A stretch of 64,000 nucleotides of DNA from assembly GCA_025201805.1 (NCBI GenBank), contig MU619261.1:236918-300917 (forward strand), written 5' to 3'. The notes under the pieces were generated by a model that saw only the letters and a program-made list of their open reading frames with translations, had not been told where the DNA came from and did not search any database. The DNA comes from Parasitella parasitica NRRL 2501 (Eukaryota; Fungi; Mucoromycota). Positions 13,999 to 22,093 of this stretch are shown piece after piece. Each line of letters starts with the position of its first letter. The stretch's first letter is position 1. Both the position numbers and the translations under genes were made by a program.

Positions 13999-15722
13999 AT
14001 GTTGGTCACAGAAACATTTCATGGTTACATTGAAACGACGCAAGATGTATTGTTGATATTTGAAGGTTGTCGCAGAGGATTGCTTCCAAGGATATGTAGA
14101 CGACTTCAAGAACGTGAGCGTAAAATGATCAGATCAGGTTCCATCTTTGTATTTGATGAAAGAGAATCAGGTAAAAAAAAAGTAACGAAAATATTCACGG
14201 CACAAACTTAGAAACTTTAAAATTATTCCCCATCCACTCAATCTTAGGCATTAAACGTTGGACAGACGGCCGAGTCTGGAGTCCTTCTCGTATTTTGGGC
14301 AACTTTTTAATTTATCGAGAATTAGATAAGAAAGCCGGTGAAAAGAAATTAGCTGCACTTAACAACAATAACAATAGCAATGAAAGAAGAAGCTTCAGTT
14401 TGGATAGCACAGTTGATAGAAACAAGGAGCGCCAACTTGTTGGTAGTTTATCAGACTCTTATAGATTTAAAGAAGACGGTCTCATCAAAAAGACAATGTC
14501 CATTATTGTAAATGGTGTAGCCCAACATCTTATCTCTTATTATGATCCTCAAGAAGTACTGCAAGAGAAATTACGTGCTCCTTCCTCGGTGCCTGAATTA
14601 GCCAGCCTTGAAATTTCACCCGAATTACTTGTCAAGCAAAACTTTAGAATCCCCCCTTTAGTCGAACCAACATTTGATCAAAATGATCATCATCTAGGGT
14701 CTATTACTCCTCCTGAGGCATCTACGTCCACCGGTTTCAATACAACACGTGCAATGCATCCTCTACGCAGTATGTCTGTAGGATCTATTCGCCATGAACA
14801 GCAACAGCAACAACTGATGTATCACCCATATCAACAACCACACCAGCACAGACCTCAATCTCCTTCGACTAATAACTTTCAGCATCCCCTATCTATACCA
14901 AATGTATATGGAAATAATAACAGCAATACTAATAATACTACAGGATTTCACGCTACAAACATGCCTTCTCCTTCGAGCTTGACATCTTCACCTAGTACAC
15001 CTATGCTTTCGCCCTCTCGCTATCACCACCAGCAACATCATCAACAACAGCAGCACCAAAGGCACTATTCAACTTCATCCGTTTCCTCTATATCATTGCC
15101 GAGATTTGACCCTCGCAACTATTCTGATCCCATGCGACAAGGCTCCTCTTCGTCTTCTTTGAACCAAATCATGACCTCGGAACAAAGTGAGCGTTTTGCT
15201 TCTCCTAATCTTGGTCAGCTATTAAATCCTATCCATCCTCTCAACAATACCAATTCAACTAATGATGCTTCTTCAACTCCTGTGACAGCTTCTCCCGCTA
15301 GTAACGATATTTTGCAGTCTATGGGTATTCATCAGCACTATGAATATAATTCATCTAACCTGCGTAATTCCATCAGCAGTGCTAGCAACGGCAATAATCA
15401 TCATCAAGGTAGCCATGTTGATATAAAGCTTGAAATGAACCCACATACTTCCAATGGCAGTAATGATGGCAATAGGGGTGATAATCACAATCATAGCCAT
15501 TTGCATCGCCATGGCGGGGGCGCCGGCGCCAGCAGTGATGGTTGTACTGAAGGAAGTAGTGGTGGAGGCGGAGGCGGAGGAGGTGATGAAAGCGGTATAG
15601 ATTATATGTACTATCAACGCCCTTTAGCCAACCATCAACAACATTTGCATAATAATTTTATGTTTCAGCAACAAGATGTTTATACAAATGCCCAAGATCA
15701 TAATGATTTAATGTTAAAATAA
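13999..15722 (+). CDS. Gti1/Pac2 (WOPR family) transcription factor
   Basis: ETFHGYIETTQDVLLIFEGCRRGLLPRICRRLQERER...IRSGSIFVFDERESG|IKRWTDGRVWSPSRILGNFLIYREL...GLIKKTMS...HLISYY. Intron at 14171-14248; Q/N/H-rich tail. Confidence 0.95.
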
Positions 15723-18214
15723 TTTGCAGATTGCCTTTTTCGTTTTTCTTTATATTGTATTGCTTTTTTTTTAAAACCCTTTCCATTGTTTCTTTTTGTT
15801 TAAAGAAATATTGTATACATATCTTGCGGTTCTTTTTTATTTATTTTCCTTTGTATGCATGTACATTTTTGTGTAAGAATTGGTCATCTCGATCAATGAA
15901 ATCTTGAAATAAAAAAACTGCGAAAATCTATAATATCTACGTCTATTTGTATTGGTACAAACCCAACCAAAGAAGGTGATTTATGAGCTCTCATTTTATA
16001 GTCTATATCATTAGCGCGCTTAATGATTCGCCTATTGCCACCTTGGTCATTTCACCGACCTATTTAATCTTTACGACAGCAAAGCAAAGGTTTTAAAACA
16101 CAAGCTGTGTTCTATTAAAAATGTTCATGCCTGCAAAAAAAAACCGCTCCTTTTTATGTATACATAAAAAAGGGGGAGGAGGGGACAATTACAAAGCGAC
16201 AAATAAAAAGCAACCAAAGTTCATGACGAAAAAAGACGCAGCGATCAAGTTATAATGGAAAAGATCGAGTGGACTCGATTGGGAAATGAGATTAAAAAAT
16301 GGATACAGAATCTCAATTCTAAACTCATCCTGATCGAATATGTGGTCCTTGGGTGCGTAGACCGTCCGTCCATCACACAGTTTTAAAGTTATTAGCTTTT
16401 ATTCTGCTTCGCCATGTCAAATCCAGGTACAGATTAAAATATTAAAAAACTGCCTTATATTGTTGATAAAGAATGTTTTCGCTCAACCTCATCAGCATTG
16501 AAGATTGGCAAGAAATCAGTCTCCCAAAACTGAAGAGCAAAAAACTGGGTTTCTTCGCTGCTGCTATTTTAGTCAAAAAGCAACTACTTTTGTAGCGAAA
16601 TTCCGTATATGCGTCGCCCTGCGGGAATAAAGTATATATCGGGCAGCCTTGATGATAGCGGTATCAGACAAGTATAAAACATGGCTTGATTTGTTCGTTA
16701 TGCAAAGTTATAAGCGTTTATATGCATATTTTCAATAAAAATTGTTGATTTTTGTGGCCACTGTTTATGTACTATACGCATAGCTTGCTTCCAACGGAAA
16801 CAATGTATGTAGCAGATGAGACTGACTTTAGAGGACATGTTATTTATCATGTCTGATCTTGGATAGCAATGTGAGGGGTCTCGTTATTAGAAGTTGTTAT
16901 ATCAATAACATGCTTTAGTGCTTGTGGCCAGATCAAGGGGCTAAAGCCAATGGATAAAAAAATGATTTACATCGCATGCTCTATATAGTAAACCTTAGTT
17001 GCAGCCGTACATTACGACGTTAGTACATAATGTTGGTTCATATAAATACACCAAGAAGATGTATTTCCTAATAAAAATGAAACTATTTGGCAGATTCATT
17101 TTACGGACTAATTTTGACATAATAACAGAAGGTATATACCAAAAACCATTGTTTATTTATACCGTAGTAGTAATGAAGTAAAGAAGAATATTTAAAAACT
17201 TCGTAGTATCAATAATAGAATCACCATATCAGTAGTAGAAGAAATATAATAGTTATTCGCCATCATTAAGCGTGGCACAATGGCTATGAGAGTGAACAGC
17301 TTGGACAGCTTCGTGAAGCGAAACAAGCTTGGCACATATTCAGCTCGTCTTCTTGTAGAAATACTGTAGTGGTTATAAGTAACATAAAACTCCTTTGAAC
17401 AATTGCAGCTGATAAAATCTCCAGAGCATGCAATAATAGTAGCTTTAATCAGAGTTATTGACATCCAAGCTGCAGAAGAAAGTGCTTTCCATCCATTTTT
17501 GCCTAACGGACTCTCATAAAAATCAAGTAAATTGATGATTATAGAGTGTCGTATTCACATGTTGGCGTTTGCCTTTCTTCCTTCCCTTCAATCAGCTCTT
17601 CAGAGCGTTTCTATTGACTCAATATTCCATTATAGAAAATGTTCTTCAGTTAAATATTTGAACTTTCGCTGCGATTTTCAGATGCATGCTCTAGCTTTTA
17701 ATCAAGCCACAGGGATTCGTTTAAATTCGCATGCTTGTCAACAGTGTTACTATTACAATTCTCTTTTTTTTTTTGCTTTTGTTTTTGTTTTTATTGTTTT
17801 TTTTTGCCTATTTTCATTAATATTTGAGAACGGAGCCATCCATATAGTTTAGAAACATGTTTACTCTTGGAATGGGCTTCATTTGGAATCTATTTAAATC
17901 TCTTTAGAGATCAGCACAATTTATACCTATGGTCTGCATTGTTTTGCATGCATCTTTTACCATGTAGCTTTAATGCAGCAAGGTCTTTCAAAACTCACTG
18001 CATTTGCTCTGTCTCATATACACCATCGAACTAGATACAAATAGTTTTATTTTACACGCTTTGCATTTATACATACATTTTTGTGTTTACGCCAGTGCAG
18101 TTCACCATAAAGGATTCTCACAAATAATAATAATTATGAAAAAAGTATATATATTCGCATGAAACTTGATTTGCCCCCAGGGCAACTATTTAATTCACTC
18201 ATATTTTAATAAAA

Positions 18215-18532
18215 ATGCATTTAGTGACTCAAATACTCATCTCATTAGCACTCGCAAGCTACATGGTACAGATATCCCAAGCTTTGCCTACAGATGGAAT
18301 GATTGGTAAATCTGAAGGCCATTCCCTGAGTAAGCGTAACGGCCTCCCTCTTGTTAGCGACTTACTTGGTGGTATTGGCAATAACAGGAGTGGTGCCACT
18401 CCTAATGCAGTAGCAGCAGAAAATGCTCAACTAATGGGTCATGGCAAGATTAGCAAGACTGGCAAGAGTACAAAATCCAAGAAGCAAAAGAAGCAGAAAA
18501 AGGCGAAGAAACATTTAAAGAAGAATCAATAA
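18215..18532 (+). CDS. Small secreted prepro-peptide with a Kex2 site, GLPLVSDLLGG motif and very basic tail; paralog of 19833-20660
   Basis: Signal peptide MHLVTQILISLALASYMVQISQA, pro-piece ending SLSKR, then NGLPLVSDLLGG and a Lys-rich C-terminus. Start context is aaaATG. Confidence 0.75.
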   Translation: MHLVTQILISLALASYMVQISQALPTDGMIGKSEGHSLSKRNGLPLVSDLLGGIGNNRSGATPNAVAAENAQLMGHGKISKTGKSTKSKKQKKQKKAKKHLKKNQ

Positions 18533-19832
18533 ATGGCCCCTGTTATTGAGCAGTTAGGGCAATGGCAAAATAAATCTTGCGTTATGGTGTACTTGAACAG
18601 CAAAAATAAAGAAGTCTATATACTTACAACAATTGTTGATTGTGGCGAAAGAAGAGTGCATATTCAGATTGTGTGAGGTATCATAATACTGTGATTACTT
18701 ATTCAAGTACATTTATGATTTGTGCATGTACAAGTCATTTAAGCGCTCTATTTAGATCAGAGATCGACCTTACACTGAAATTGACTCAGATCAGTATTAG
18801 AATTTATATTGACAATACAGCCACTATATGATATTACCATAGTATAAGCTTACACAAATAGCTTGTTGAGCTTTCATAGAAGACTAACCATAGTCATTTT
18901 ATCCACATTAATGTCATAAACTAGGGACATTGTATAAAATACTATCACGCACATCAAGGATAAATAACGCAATACAGAAAGACTAATTAATGCAATACAG
19001 AAAAAAAAAAATTAAAAGAGAAATACTACTAAGAAAGGAGCTATACTATGTATGCTTGCATCTACTTTATTCTTCTTTTTGTACATCTTCCTAGTAAAAA
19101 CACAGAGGATACATTCACCATTTCTCATGCGGCTGCAACAGTTTTGATTGTTCATACAATGGGCCCCCTAATTGATCTTTCTCCCTTCTTTGCCTACCCC
19201 GTCCTAATTTACCCCTTACATACTAGAGTTGTTGGAGTATTTCAACGTTTAGCTACATATCACACATACAATCTGACACAGGCTTCGAATGAGGCCTGTG
19301 TTTCTTACTTGGGAATAGCGACTGCAAAATACCAAAAAGGGGGAGTATCTCGCTCAAAAAGAAGGGGAAGACTTGGATGAAACGGGATAAGGGATCAGAA
19401 GAAATGGCAGCACCAAATACACCAACAGCAGGTACAACGACAATTGGTAAGGCTGTGTTCTTGAAATATATATGTATATATTTATTCATTTTTATTCATT
19501 AATATATGATAGCTCTAATGAAAAATGTAATGAAATATTGTGGGTGTAGTACATCATTATACTCAAGACACGTGAGCCACCTTTTGCTTGAGCTTATAAA
19601 GAATATAGACAGGTGGACCTGAAGAAAGCTAAATAATAGGAGTATCTCAATGTTTCCTACTTGCAACACAAATCCTCCCTCTTTATAGTATGCATATGAG
19701 TATATATATATATTTTTTTTTTTTTTACTAAGACCACTATAATCCTTATTCATATATAAGGGTTAATTACCAGTTTTCTTTCCATTGATTTTTAATACTC
19801 TCTTTTTAACTTTATAGAACTTTTTGTATAAA

Positions 19833-20660
19833 ATGCGCACACATACATTATTTGCCGTAGCACTTGCTAGTTTCTTGATCAATTTCTCAGAAGCAGCCAC
19901 CTTGAACAAGCGAAATGAAGCGGTCGATATGGTGACAGGTTTTGTGACACCAGGAGGTGTCAGTAACTTGGCTGGAACTGCTGCTAGTTCAGTTCCTTCC
20001 ACTGCTGGTGTATTGGGTAAACGTGAAGAGGAAATGAAGAGAGATCTCTTGGGTGGCTTGCCTCTCGTTGGTGGCCTTTTGGGAGGTGATGGAAAGGCAG
20101 CCCCTGCTTCAGCAAAGAAAGGCAGTAAAGGCAAAGGCACAGCATCAACTGGAGAAGATGGTCTTTTAGGCGGTTTAGTAAAGCGAGATCTCTTGGGTGG
20201 TGGCTTGCCTCTCGTTGGTGACCTTTTGGGAGGTGATGGAAAGGCAGCCCCTGCTTCAGCAAAGAAAGGCAGTAAAGGCAAAGGCACAGCATCAACTGGA
20301 GAAGATGGTCTTTTAGGCGGTTTAGTAAAGCGAGATCTCTTAGGTGGTGGCTTGCCTCTCGTTGGTGACCTTTTGGGAGGTGATGGAAAGGCAGCCCCTG
20401 CTTCAGCAAAGAAAGGCAGTAAAGGCAAAGGCACAGCATCAACTGGAGAAGATGGTCTTTTAGGCGGTTTAGTAAAGCGAGATCTCTTAGGTGGTGGCTT
20501 GCCTCTTGTTGGTGACCTTTTGGGAAGTGATGGAAATCCCGGCAAGAAAGCTAAGCAAGCTGCAACAAAGGGCAATGGTCGTGGCCGTAAGAGCAGTAGT
20601 AAAACACAAGAAGAAGGTGGTGTGTTAGGTGGTGGGTTGCCTGTTATTGGCGGCCTTTAG
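19833..20660 (+). CDS. Secreted Kex2-processed repeat protein (KEP-type peptide precursor)
   Basis: ATG 19833; signal peptide MRTHTLFAVALASFLINFSEA; six KR sites; three near-identical 48-49-aa units KR-DLLGG(G)LPLVG(D/G)LLGGDGKAAPASAKKGSKGKGTASTGEDGLLGGLV plus a divergent fourth. TATA-like catatataag at ~19751. Confidence 0.85.
   Translation: MRTHTLFAVALASFLINFSEAATLNKRNEAVDMVTGFVTPGGVSNLAGTAASSVPSTAGVLGKREEEMKRDLLGGLPLVGGLLGGDGKAAPASAKKGSKGKGTASTGEDGLLGGLVKRDLLGGGLPLVGDLLGGDGKAAPASAKKGSKGKGTASTGEDGLLGGLVKRDLLGGGLPLVGDLLGGDGKAAPASAKKGSKGKGTASTGEDGLLGGLVKRDLLGGGLPLVGDLLGSDGNPGKKAKQAATKGNGRGRKSSSKTQEEGGVLGGGLPVIGGL
20037..20535 (+). repeat. Coding tandem repeat, 144/147-nt unit, ~3.4 copies
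   Basis: Units start at 20037, 20181, 20328 and 20475 and are nearly identical at the DNA level. Confidence 0.95.
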
Positions 20661-22093
20661 GGTTAAACATAATACTAGAGAATTCAAATAAATTATATTG
20701 TCTTATTACGAATAACATGTTATGCGCATGGCTTTTGCATCGGCATTTCCAAAGCAATGTATATCTGTTTGGAGCATGTTTCTGCTATATCGTTGCTATC
20801 TGTCTAATTCAGATAAGACGCTGTTGCATCTCCTTAACTCTGGGTGTGCTTAGCATCAAGCTTTTTGTCATTAATGAATTCATTACGTAAAATAGACCTT
20901 TCTCTCAACCTGCATCCGTTCTGCGCAATGGGAATTGTACAACATAGTGTAACTGACTGTTGCAATCAATAACGAATACATTTCCTTGATGTTGATCCCA
21001 AGTCTACAATGTTTCAAAAATCGGTCAAACCTGCCCACTCAGTCATAAATTTACTCCTGCAAACAGGCCAATATTATTCCATGCCAAAAAACGTGGCAGC
21101 TGCTATTTGTATGATGAGAAATCCTTTGGGAAACTTGTCTGAAATATTGAATTGATATTTTGAAAGGTTACTGAAAATATAACTGTGATAAATTGAATAC
21201 ACAGCACCTTCGGTCTATGAGCAAAATGGTGGCTTGAATTCAAGATACAACATAGTCATAAAGGTAAACGTAAATGATCATTTCACACTTTTTCATTAGT
21301 AAGTGATGAAGAAACATCTAGTTTGCGCCATGCTGCCACAATAGAAATACAAACTATGTGTCAACGTAAGCAACCAAGTAATCAGATGTCAAGATGAATC
21401 GCATTTTGATTTTCAGTAGAGTAAATGTATTAACAATATAGTGGTATCGTTTATTCGATCAGAGACACATTCGTTATCATTAAAAAAAAATATTTTAGCT
21501 TGAAACGATTATCTCTCCATCCTAAAACTTGACCTGTGGGAATCGTCATGAGGAGCTAGCATTTTCGATCAATTTCCGCATGTTGCTGATACCTTGGAAA
21601 ACTAACACATGCAATTTCATATTTTGAGTGGATGGCGGCAAATGTGGTGTAGCTATTTATCGTGCCCAAAAGGAAAAAAAACTTGTTTGGGGTTACTGAC
21701 CCTTACTTCATTGTGGAAAAAAAGGGGTGAATCGAATCAGTAGCAGTACAAACATAATTACCTGCTTTTATATTCTTGAATTAACATATGAAAATAGTCA
21801 ACCTGATAACTTGCTAATCACAACACCAACACAGTTGACAACCAATTTACAATAGAAAAATGCCATGATTGTGATACAAAGGCAGGCATTCAAAAGCGGA
21901 TTTATGCAAAGGGTGTCTTTTGATATGTCTCATTCGCCCTGGACTGTCCTGCTTGCCACATTTTGTTAACACAGGTTTCACCCATGGAGAAAAAATTAAA
22001 AAAAAAAAAAAGGACCGATCTCTATAAATCCCCATCCGCAATGTCTTGGAATTTCTTTCCCTCTTTCAACTTTCTTTCTTTGTCGTTTCGAAT

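What the first reader, a model, noticed from the sequence alone, without database searches (positions are those of the whole stretch)
19833..20660. Kex2-processed repeat precursor releasing tandem amphipathic-cationic-amphipathic peptides
Seen: a signal peptide followed by six KR sites. Predicted products are NEAVDMVTGF...AGVLG, a spacer EEEM, three near-identical 46-47-aa peptides DLLGG(G)LPLVG(D/G)LLGG-DGKAAPASAKKGSKGKGTAST-GEDGLLGGLV, and a divergent C-terminal peptide ending GGVLGGGLPVIGGL. There are no Cys residues and no aromatic residues in the repeats. Known: KR-delimited repeat precursors give rise to yeast alpha-factor, Ustilago Rep1 repellents and Candida Ece1/candidalysin; the LPLVGxLL core resembles temporin-type amphipathic helices. 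Inference: a Mucorales secreted peptide system acting as a surface-active, hydrophobin-substitute coat or as a membrane-active/antimicrobial peptide. No DUF3328 oxidase is visible nearby, so the products are probably linear rather than dikaritin-type cyclic peptides.
Basis: partly seen in the sequence, partly recalled or inferred. Interest (0 to 1): 0.85.

Follow-up and report, generated by a model that had tools for sequence, protein, structure and literature searches.

The report
Mucoraceae secreted KR-delimited repeat peptide precursor
This is a real, conserved gene of Mucor-type moulds that encodes a secreted, unstructured precursor apparently cut at Lys-Arg sites into several Gly/Leu/Lys-rich peptides; that makes it a new, uncharacterised member of a known class of fungal peptide precursors, and its function is still untested.

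Summary
Window 19833-20660 (+) is an intact, intronless 275-codon ORF with a signal peptide, six Lys-Arg sites, three near-identical 46-47-aa units (147-nt repeat, 97% identity) and a divergent 59-aa C-terminal peptide.

It is a real gene:
- Orthologues exist in Parasitella and at least six Mucor species, in conserved synteny.
- dN/dS is 0.15-0.33.
- The KR sites are conserved in position.
- A single-unit paralogue 1.3 kb upstream (18215-18532) carries the same R-[D/N]-GLPLVxDLLGG module. This lead came from earlier scan notes on this same stretch.
- Genome-wide, the motif occurs only at this locus.
- The genome encodes two kexin-type convertases. No UstYa/DUF3328 and no hydrophobin was detected.

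The protein has no Pfam, NCBIfam or PDB match and is predicted disordered. It meets the published operational definition of a Kex2-processed repeat protein (KEP), a class already catalogued in Mucoromycota.

The units have net charge 0 to +1, their hydrophobic moment is about 0.3, and no helix is predicted. Transcript evidence is only suggestive: one run of uncertain type, with the repeat unitig about 40-200 times deeper than its neighbours.

Verdict: a new member of a known kind, of moderate interest.

The parts
19753..19760 (+). TATATAAG, a TATA-box-like element 73-80 nt upstream of the ATG
   Evidence: Read from the sequence. This is a consensus match only.
19833..20660 (+). Complete intronless CDS of the 275-aa precursor, including the stop codon
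   Evidence: Collinear from end to end with annotated orthologues. dN/dS 0.15-0.33.
19833..19895 (+). Signal peptide, aa 1-21, with predicted cleavage SEA|A
   Evidence: Hydropathy and the -3/-1 rule. The only AF2 helix, pLDDT about 70. Nearly invariant across the family, with dN/dS 0.02-0.18.
19908..19913 (+). KR site 1 (TLNKR|N)
   Evidence: Shared with Parasitella P0001 and P0009.
19914..20018 (+). 35-aa N-terminal peptide NEAVDM...AGVLG, net charge -2
   Evidence: Conserved block with invariant D32, V34, V38, G41, G42, T49, A50 and A51.
20019..20042 (+). KR site 2, acidic spacer EEEM, KR site 3
20043..20180 (+). Repeat peptide 1 (46 aa, net +1)
20181..20186 (+). KR site 4 (GLVKR|D)
   Evidence: The site is at a conserved position as GGL[LV]KR|DLLGGG in homologues.
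20187..20327 (+). Repeat peptide 2 (47 aa, net 0)
20328..20333 (+). KR site 5
20334..20474 (+). Repeat peptide 3 (47 aa, net 0). It differs from unit 2 by one synonymous base.
20475..20480 (+). KR site 6
20481..20657 (+). 59-aa C-terminal peptide (net +3). It has the GLPLVGDLLG motif at its N-terminus and GGLPVIGGL at its C-terminus. This is the most conserved unit of the family.
   Evidence: Invariant columns G220-G231, K239, A243-244, G249-R252 and G262-L275. The corresponding peptide in Mucor spp. carries +10 to +15.
20658..20666 (+). TAG stop followed by GGT TAA. Orthologues read Leu-Gly-stop here, so this copy ends two residues early.
   Evidence: The family profile aligns through the TAG.
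20687..20692 (+). AATAAA, 27 nt after the stop codon
   Evidence: Read from the sequence. This is a consensus match only.
18215..18532 (+). Single-unit paralogue (105 aa): signal peptide, short propeptide, KR, NGLPLVSDLLGG, then a Lys-rich tail. The predicted 64-aa product has net charge +13.
   Evidence: Orthologues lie beside the KEP gene in M. lusitanicus and M. circinelloides, and two locus tags away from it in M. velutinosus. M. bainieri has three in tandem on another contig. dN/dS 0.13.

Best explanation
The gene encodes a lineage-restricted (Mucoraceae) secreted Kex2-processed repeat protein (KEP).

Inferred pathway:
- The signal peptide takes the disordered precursor into the ER.
- A Golgi kexin cuts after each conserved Lys-Arg.
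- A Kex1-type carboxypeptidase trims the basic pair.
- The cell releases one 35-aa N-peptide, three near-identical 46-47-aa peptides and one 59-aa C-terminal peptide.

Each released unit has three blocks. A Gly/Leu-rich hydrophobic cap (D-LLGG(G)-LP[LVI]VG[D/G]LLGG) becomes exposed as the new N-terminus. A flexible Lys-rich linker follows. A second, shorter Gly/Leu cap sits at the C-terminus.

The same module, exposed after an invariant Arg, recurs in the neighbouring single-unit gene. The functional element is therefore most likely the terminal GLPxVGxLLG cap tethered to a basic segment.

The most likely role is extracellular. The peptides would associate through the caps with hydrophobic surfaces, membranes or each other, and through the Lys/Arg segment with anionic wall or membrane components.

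Shown here: gene reality, conservation, the KR pattern, the paralogue, the presence of kexins, and the lack of a fold. Inferred only: cleavage, secretion and any activity.
For: - Intact ORF with signal peptide and six KR sites.
- Orthologues in Parasitella parasitica (59% identity, full length) and at least six Mucor species. Microsynteny is conserved: Gti1/Pac2, small paralogue, KEP, zf-C2H2, Mpv17/PMP22, antizyme.
- Purifying selection: dN/dS 0.15-0.33 overall and 0.02-0.18 for the signal peptide.
- KR sites are conserved in position, almost always with Leu, Val or Lys at P4. They always sit at the borders of Gly/Leu motifs.
- Outside the signal peptide and one GRGR stretch, Arg occurs only in KR. 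The Lys-rich linkers contain no Arg.
- The number of repeat units differs between species, from 1 to 4, as is typical of KEPs.
- The DNA-level motif G-L-P-x-[VI]-x-[DG]-L-L-G occurs five times in the 32.8-Mb genome, all at this locus, with none in the reverse or control scans. Profile searches find no other copy.
- The paralogue family keeps R-[DN]-G-x-P-L-V invariant.
- Two loci have Peptidase_S8 plus P_proprotein architecture.
- AF2 gives mean pLDDT 44 and ESMFold gives 0.37, so there is no fold.
- The protein meets Umemura's KEP criteria: signal peptide, at least 3 repeats of 8-100 aa between dibasic sites (PMC7329392).
- In run X1 the collapsed repeat unitig has k-mer depth 835, against 4-15 for neighbouring contigs. 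The same run holds a GTAAGT..AG spliced junction nearby, which suggests RNA and high expression.
Against: - There is no direct evidence of cleavage, secretion or any peptide.
- The nature of run X1 is only a guess. The unique 5' and 3' parts of the gene were not seen in it, so the high depth could instead reflect a larger repeat array than the one assembled.
- Some homologues have Glu-Arg rather than Lys-Arg in front of the motif: QER|DLLGGG in several Mucor KEPs and MER|DG in the M. bainieri paralogues. That is a poor Kex2 site.
- In Lys/Arg-rich homologues the KR count alone is not above chance, with shuffle p of 0.06-0.18 in six of them.
- The repeat peptides of this genome are net-neutral, have a low hydrophobic moment and show no predicted helix. 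That weakens a membrane-active reading.
Confidence: 0.62

Rival explanations
1. It is an unprocessed, intrinsically disordered Gly/Leu/Lys-rich secreted or wall-matrix protein. It would act as a flexible polyampholyte coat or spacer, and the KR dipeptides would be conserved for charge rather than for cleavage.
For: - No fold is predicted.
- The composition is low-complexity: G 65, L 42, A 28 and K 27 of 275 residues.
- The KR count is not above chance in several basic homologues.
- Some motif-preceding sites are ER rather than KR.
Against: - The KR sites are conserved in position, have aliphatic or basic P4 residues and always lie at unit borders.
- Within the units Arg is used only in KR.
- An acidic EEEM spacer sits between two KR sites.
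- The single-unit paralogue places the motif directly after a short propeptide ending in KR.
Confidence: 0.2
2. The released peptides are membrane-active host-defence or cytolytic peptides. They would be functionally analogous to candidalysin (Ece1) or to amphibian temporin-type peptides.
For: - The precursor layout is a hyper-conserved signal peptide, acidic spacers, KR, then a hydrophobic LP[LVI]VGxLL motif.
- The family's conserved C-terminal product carries +10 to +15 in Mucor spp., and the paralogue product carries +13.
- From memory, untested: many temporins share an (F/L)LP(L/I)(I/V)GxLL core, and frog AMP precursors have the same layout of conserved signal peptide, acidic propiece and KR.
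Against: - In this genome the three amplified units have net charge 0 to +1, a hydrophobic moment of about 0.3 and no predicted helix.
- The motif carries Asp where temporins carry Lys, Asn or Arg.
- The peptides are 46-93 aa, not 10-31 aa.
- There is no homology to any such family.
Confidence: 0.12
3. The peptides are Rep1-like repellents. They would coat hyphae and sporangiophores and lower wettability in a lineage that lacks hydrophobins.
For: - No hydrophobin Pfam match was found in the genome. A survey found three Mucorales without canonical hydrophobins (bioRxiv 10.1101/2022.08.19.504535).
- Ustilago Rep1 is a KEP whose Kex2-released peptides are water-repellent and needed for aerial hyphae (PMC7329392).
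- From memory, the unit size of 46-47 aa falls within the Rep1 peptide size range.
- The run X1 data may indicate very high expression.
Against: - The peptides are only weakly hydrophobic overall (GRAVY 0.04-0.12) and a third of each is a Lys/Ser/Gly-rich hydrophilic linker.
- There is no sequence similarity to Rep1.
- The hydrophobin searches had silent controls, so absence is not shown.
- There is no developmental expression data.
Confidence: 0.12
4. It is a precursor of a ribosomally synthesised, cyclised peptide (a dikaritin or ustiloxin-type RiPP), or of an alpha-factor-like mating pheromone.
For: It has the general KEP architecture.
Against: - No UstYa/DUF3328 was found in the genome.
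- There is no Tyr in the protein, and Tyr is mandatory for that cyclisation (PMC7329392).
- The units are 46-47 aa, against 8-14 aa in known cores.
- There are no Ste13 XA/XP dipeptides after KR.
- Mucoromycotina use apocarotenoids as sexual pheromones, as stated in PMC6339444.
- No modifying enzymes lie among the neighbouring genes.
Confidence: 0.03

Closest known systems
Kex2-processed repeat proteins (KEPs) as defined by Le Marquer et al. 2019 (PMC6339444) and Umemura 2020 (PMC7329392)
   Same: It has a signal peptide and at least 3 tandem repeats of 8-100 aa bounded by dibasic sites. The class is already catalogued in Mucoromycota: 357 KEPs in 39 strains, including 8 in Parasitella parasitica and 6 in Mucor ambiguus.
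   Different: KEP is an architectural class, not a homologous family. This peptide family has no detectable relative outside Mucoraceae and has not been described. The part of Umemura's Table S2 that is held here has no Mucoromycota rows, so I could not tell whether the Parasitella orthologue is listed. [quoted passage not shown]
Ustilago maydis Rep1 repellent precursor
   Same: It is a secreted precursor cut by Kex2 into several similar peptides of tens of residues that act at the cell surface (PMC7329392).
   Different: There is no sequence similarity. The units here contain a long Lys-rich hydrophilic linker. Wall association and repellent activity are untested.
Candida albicans Ece1 / candidalysin
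   Same: It is a KR-delimited polyprotein in a pathogenic-fungus lineage that releases linear peptides (PMC7329392).
   Different: Candidalysin is a single 31-aa amphipathic helical cationic peptide among non-identical pieces (from memory). Here the units are repeated, 46-47 aa long, net-neutral and not predicted to be helical.
Amphibian temporin/preprodermaseptin-type precursors (recalled from memory, a lead only)
   Same: The layout is a hyper-conserved signal peptide, an acidic spacer, KR, then a hydrophobic peptide with an LP(L/I/V)(V/I)GxLL core.
   Different: They belong to a different kingdom and share no homology. Temporins are 10-14 aa, C-terminally amidated and net-positive. Here the motif is only the cap of a much longer peptide and carries Asp.

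Membership tests
KEP (Kex2-processed repeat protein; Umemura 2020 operational definition) | N-terminal ER signal peptide | tested here: met
   There is a basic n-region, a 14-residue h-region (mean KD 2.06) and a SEA|A c-region. It is the only helix in the AF2 model and is conserved in all homologues. SignalP itself was not available.
KEP (Kex2-processed repeat protein; Umemura 2020 operational definition) | At least 3 tandem repeats of at least 8 aa and at most 100 aa between dibasic (KR/KK/RK/RR) sites | tested here: met
   There are three units of 46, 47 and 47 aa, each bounded by KR. The criteria are quoted.
KEP (Kex2-processed repeat protein; Umemura 2020 operational definition) | Actual cleavage by kexin and release of peptides | not testable with these tools
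   Support is indirect only. Two S8 plus P-domain convertase loci exist in the genome, and the KR sites are conserved in position.
Dikaritin / ustiloxin-type RiPP precursor | UstYa/DUF3328 oxidase gene near the precursor | tested here: not met
   PF11807 gave no match in the whole genome. The controls were silent, so this is weak evidence. No such gene is called in the syntenic loci of Parasitella or M. lusitanicus.
Dikaritin / ustiloxin-type RiPP precursor | Tyr in a short (8-14 aa) repeated core | tested here: not met
   The protein has no Tyr and the units are 46-47 aa. The requirement is stated in PMC7329392.
Alpha-factor-type pheromone precursor | Ste13 XA/XP dipeptide repeats after the KR site, and units of 9-24 aa | tested here: not met
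   KR is followed by DLLGG, NEAV or EEEM, and the units are 46-47 aa.
Hydrophobin (class I/II) | Eight conserved Cys; Pfam PF01185 or PF06766 | tested here: not met
   There are no Cys residues and no Pfam hit.
Rep1 repellents | Sequence homology to Rep1, and wall-bound amyloid-like surface-active peptides | tested here: inconclusive
   Broad profile and word searches returned no relatives outside Mucoraceae. Physical properties cannot be tested here.
Temporin-like antimicrobial peptides | Short (10-14 aa), net-positive, amphipathic helical peptide | tested here: not met
   The units are 46-47 aa with net charge 0 to +1 and a hydrophobic moment of about 0.3. No helix is predicted.

The most novel reading that the evidence does not exclude
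The two adjacent genes form a Mucoraceae-specific peptide system. Convertase cleavage after an invariant Arg would expose a Gly/Leu-rich GLPxVGxLLG cap tethered to a polycationic segment. This would be a previously unrecognised class of fungal surface- or membrane-active peptides, either filling the hydrophobin/repellent niche or acting as host-defence or cytolytic peptides in a lineage that includes agents of mucormycosis. Its precursor design would be convergent with amphibian antimicrobial-peptide precursors.
Probability: 0.15. Interest if true: 0.75.

Novelty: new member of a known kind. Interest (0 to 1): 0.45.

Why it matters
KEPs have been counted in early-diverging fungi, but none has been characterised there. 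Le Marquer et al. state that their role in Mucoromycotina 'remains to be elucidated'.

This locus is a clean candidate for a first functional study:
- It is single-copy.
- It lies in conserved synteny across Mucor and Parasitella.
- It has a companion single-unit gene that shares the same motif.
- It is possibly very highly expressed.
- It has an orthologue in the genetically tractable M. lusitanicus (MUCCIDRAFT_115294).

If the peptides turn out to be surface-active or membrane-active, that would bear on two questions. One is how moulds in which no hydrophobin has been found build hydrophobic aerial structures. The other is how they interact with competitors or hosts.

If they are merely a disordered secreted protein, the finding is an ordinary lineage-specific orphan.

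Tried and rejected
- **Family and structure searches gave nothing.** Pfam, NCBIfam and PDB sequence searches returned no usable match.
- **ESM Atlas gave nothing usable.** The feature search found no hit, and the structural neighbours (TM at most 0.31 to methyltransferases) are meaningless for a model with pLDDT 0.37.
- **The family is tiny.** The profile search of 1.84 billion representatives returned five proteins. One of them (P0012) is an unrelated KEP-like repeat protein matched on composition.
- **The paralogue alone was too weak a query.** A single-sequence search found nothing. The alignment-based search worked.
- **The gene's own product is not on record.** An exact look-up found nothing, so no transcript contig could be identified that way.
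- **Literature searches found no paper.** Searches for the orthologues' accessions and locus tags returned none.
- **Supplement searches were inconclusive.** Those of the two KEP surveys could not show whether the family was listed.
- **No Parasitella paralogue was found.** A search of the 8 kb upstream of the Parasitella gene found none. That stretch contains an assembly gap.
- **GPI anchoring was considered and set aside.** The C-terminal Gly/Leu stretch is only about 13 residues, and the same motif recurs internally straight after KR. No GPI predictor was available.
- **Complex prediction was not used.** The report claims no binding.
- **The joined-exon rule did not apply.** The gene is intronless.

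Full report
**1. What is in the sequence**

Window 19833-20660 (+) is an uninterrupted 275-codon ORF. It starts at an ATG with A at -3. A TATATAAG element lies 73-80 nt upstream and an AATAAA lies 27 nt after the stop. These two are consensus matches only.

The product begins with a textbook signal peptide, MRTHTLFAVALASFLINFSEA|A. The h-region has a mean Kyte-Doolittle value of 2.06.

There are exactly six Lys-Arg dipeptides. Cutting at them gives these pieces:

| Piece | Length (aa) | Net charge |
|---|---|---|
| ATLN remnant | 4 | 0 |
| N-peptide | 35 | -2 |
| EEEM spacer | 4 | -3 |
| Unit 1 | 46 | +1 |
| Unit 2 | 47 | 0 |
| Unit 3 | 47 | 0 |
| C-terminal peptide | 59 | +3 |

TRF reports a 147-nt unit x 3.4 at 97% identity. 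Units 2 and 3 differ by a single synonymous base. Unit 1 differs by a 3-nt indel plus one Gly/Asp change.

The protein has no Cys, Trp or Tyr. Outside the signal peptide and one GRGR stretch, every Arg is part of a KR. The Lys-rich linkers contain no Arg at all.

**2. It is a real, conserved gene**

A word-indexed search of 5.8 billion proteins found ten relatives. All named ones are hypothetical proteins of Parasitella parasitica (59% identity, full length) or of Mucor species: ambiguus, fragilis, bainieri, velutinosus, circinelloides and lusitanicus.

An HMM built from the family and run against 1.84 billion cluster representatives found only five proteins. The family is thus confined to Mucoraceae-like fungi.

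The annotated orthologues are collinear with this ORF from Met1 to the C-terminus, so no intron is involved.

Synteny is conserved. In M. lusitanicus the order is Gti1/Pac2, a 109-aa gene, the orthologue, zf-C2H2, Mpv17/PMP22, then antizyme. The window has the same Gti1/Pac2 and Mpv17 neighbours.

Nei-Gojobori dN/dS values are as follows:

| Comparison | dN/dS |
|---|---|
| Window vs Parasitella | 0.33 |
| M. lusitanicus vs a M. circinelloides-type contig | 0.15 |
| Signal peptide only | 0.02-0.18 |

The gene is single-copy in its 32.8-Mb genome.

**3. Evidence that the KR sites are processing sites**

The KR sites are conserved in position across the family. They fall into four groups:
- ...KKKR|[DS]GLPLAG after the N-peptide;
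- GLLKKR|GLVDGLLGG;
- DE-x-TKR|S after an acidic block;
- GGL[LV]KR|DLLGGGLP[VLI]VG before each unit.

P4 is nearly always Leu, Val or Lys. From memory, that fits Kex2's preference for an aliphatic or basic residue at P4.

The number of units varies from one to four between species, as is usual for KEPs.

The genome encodes two convertases with Peptidase_S8 plus P-domain architecture.

A second gene 1.3 kb upstream (18215-18532) was flagged by earlier scan notes on this same stretch and verified here. It encodes a signal peptide, a short propeptide, KR, NGLPLVSDLLGG and a Lys-rich tail.

This paralogue has orthologues in several Mucor species:
- They lie beside the KEP gene in M. lusitanicus and in M. 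circinelloides (locus tags PS15m_005619/005620).
- In M. velutinosus the two genes are two locus tags apart (ATC70_002800 and 002802).
- M. bainieri has three in tandem, on a different contig from its KEP orthologue.
- Across these proteins R-[D/N]-G-x-P-L-V is invariant.

At the DNA level the motif G-L-P-x-[VI]-x-[DG]-L-L-G occurs five times in the whole genome. All five are at this locus. None appears on the reverse strand or in the reversed-pattern control.

Two caveats apply. Several homologues have Glu-Arg rather than Lys-Arg in front of the motif. In the more basic homologues the KR count alone is not above chance.

**4. What the products look like**

Neither AF2 with the family alignment (mean pLDDT 44, pTM 0.15) nor the Atlas ESMFold model (pLDDT 0.37) predicts any structure apart from the signal-peptide helix and a low-confidence helix over aa 62-72, around the KR-EEEM-KR spacer. 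There is no Pfam, NCBIfam or PDB match.

Each unit has three blocks: a Gly/Leu-rich cap, a Lys/Ser/Gly/Ala linker, and a shorter Gly/Leu cap.

In this genome the amplified units are net-neutral. The helical hydrophobic moment of the caps is only 0.27-0.31 at mean hydrophobicity 0.59. They are hydrophobic and glycine-rich rather than amphipathic.

The evolutionarily conserved product is the last unit. In Mucor species it is 78-93 aa long, carries the full GLPVVGGLLG motif at both ends and has net charge +10 to +15. The paralogue product carries +13.

The common design is therefore a terminal GLPxVGxLLG cap exposed after Arg and tethered to a basic segment.

**5. Expression**

Only one public run holds this DNA. 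Its type is recorded as a guess.

Its contigs match the window perfectly over about 1.6 kb. They include a 177-nt unitig, which equals the 147-nt unit plus k-1, on the repeat. That unitig has k-mer depth 835, against 4-15 for neighbouring contigs.

The run also holds a junction that skips 18288-18365. Its ends read as GTAAGT...AG on the minus strand. The junction and the patchy coverage suggest RNA, and the depth then suggests strong expression.

However, the unique 5' and 3' parts of the gene were not among the contigs shown. Contigs also cannot show strand or transcript ends. The alternative, a much longer repeat array collapsed in the assembly, cannot be excluded. I count this as suggestive only.

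**6. Interpretation**

The best-supported reading (about 0.6) is a secreted KEP-type precursor processed at KR into linear peptides.

It meets Umemura's operational KEP definition. KEPs are already known to be common in Mucoromycota, at 9.15 per strain, with 8 in Parasitella. Their roles there are unknown.

Dikaritin-type modification is unlikely. The protein has no Tyr, and no UstYa was found. A pheromone role is also unlikely. There are no Ste13 dipeptides, and Mucoromycotina use apocarotenoids.

- *Hydrophobin substitute.* No hydrophobin Pfam hit was found in the genome (controls silent), and a survey found three Mucorales without canonical hydrophobins. That only leaves the niche open.
- *Membrane-active peptide.* The neutral charge and lack of predicted helicity of the amplified units argue against a classical cationic amphipathic peptide. 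The strongly cationic C-terminal and paralogue products in relatives keep the idea alive.

**7. Verdict**

This is a real, conserved, uncharacterised two-gene peptide-precursor locus. It is a new member of a known kind (KEP). Interest is moderate at 0.45.

No sequences resembling human DNA were met. No spliced model had to be joined.

Noticed in passing
window 18288-18365 (minus strand), inside the paralogue ORF 18215-18532: Run X1 holds a junction that skips 78 nt. Its ends read as GTAAGT...AG on the minus strand (spliced depth 6.6, unspliced depth 15). This suggests a spliced antisense transcript over the paralogue gene. On the + strand the skip is in frame and would remove the propeptide, the KR and most of the motif. 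The contig chain runs from about 17796 to 18581 and ends 7 nt after an AATAAA at 18569-18574.
   Followed up: partly
window 20658-20666: The gene ends GGL-TAG-GGT-TAA, whereas every orthologue ends GGLLG-stop. A Leu codon appears to have become TAG, which shortens the conserved C-terminal motif by two residues. The old stop codon is still in place two codons later.
   Followed up: partly
window 20161-20337 (position 20221): The high-depth repeat unitig of run X1 has G where the assembly has A, giving Gly instead of Asp in GLPLVG[D/G]LLGG. This unit type is not present in the assembled array. Possible causes are strain variation, a collapsed or mis-assembled array, or an RNA/DNA difference. These cannot be told apart without DNA reads of the same strain.
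   Followed up: no
window 14295-15722 (+): A Gti1/Pac2 (Wor1/Ryp1/Sge1-type regulator) gene lies upstream of the two peptide genes. This arrangement is conserved in M. lusitanicus. It is adjacency only, and no regulatory link was tested.
   Followed up: no
P0010, P0011 (loci L013-L015): Divergent relatives from Logan assemblies keep the signal peptide, the KR sites and the GLP[VIL]VG motifs. They add a different C-terminal piece after KR (TGFPET...GKT[IV]LVFDA). They lie next to Mpv17/PMP22 in a different order.
   Followed up: no
P0020: A paralogue-family protein is labelled Rhizopus arrhizus (G6F42_010881), yet it closely matches the M. circinelloides-type sequences in L016 and L017. It could be a mislabelled or contaminated assembly, or a true Rhizopus member.
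   Followed up: no
window 19833-19895 and orthologues: The signal peptide is the most conserved part of the protein. It is nearly invariant across genera, with dN/dS 0.02-0.18 against 0.15-0.33 overall. Synonymous divergence in it is normal in the Mucor pair, so the constraint acts on the protein.
   Followed up: partly
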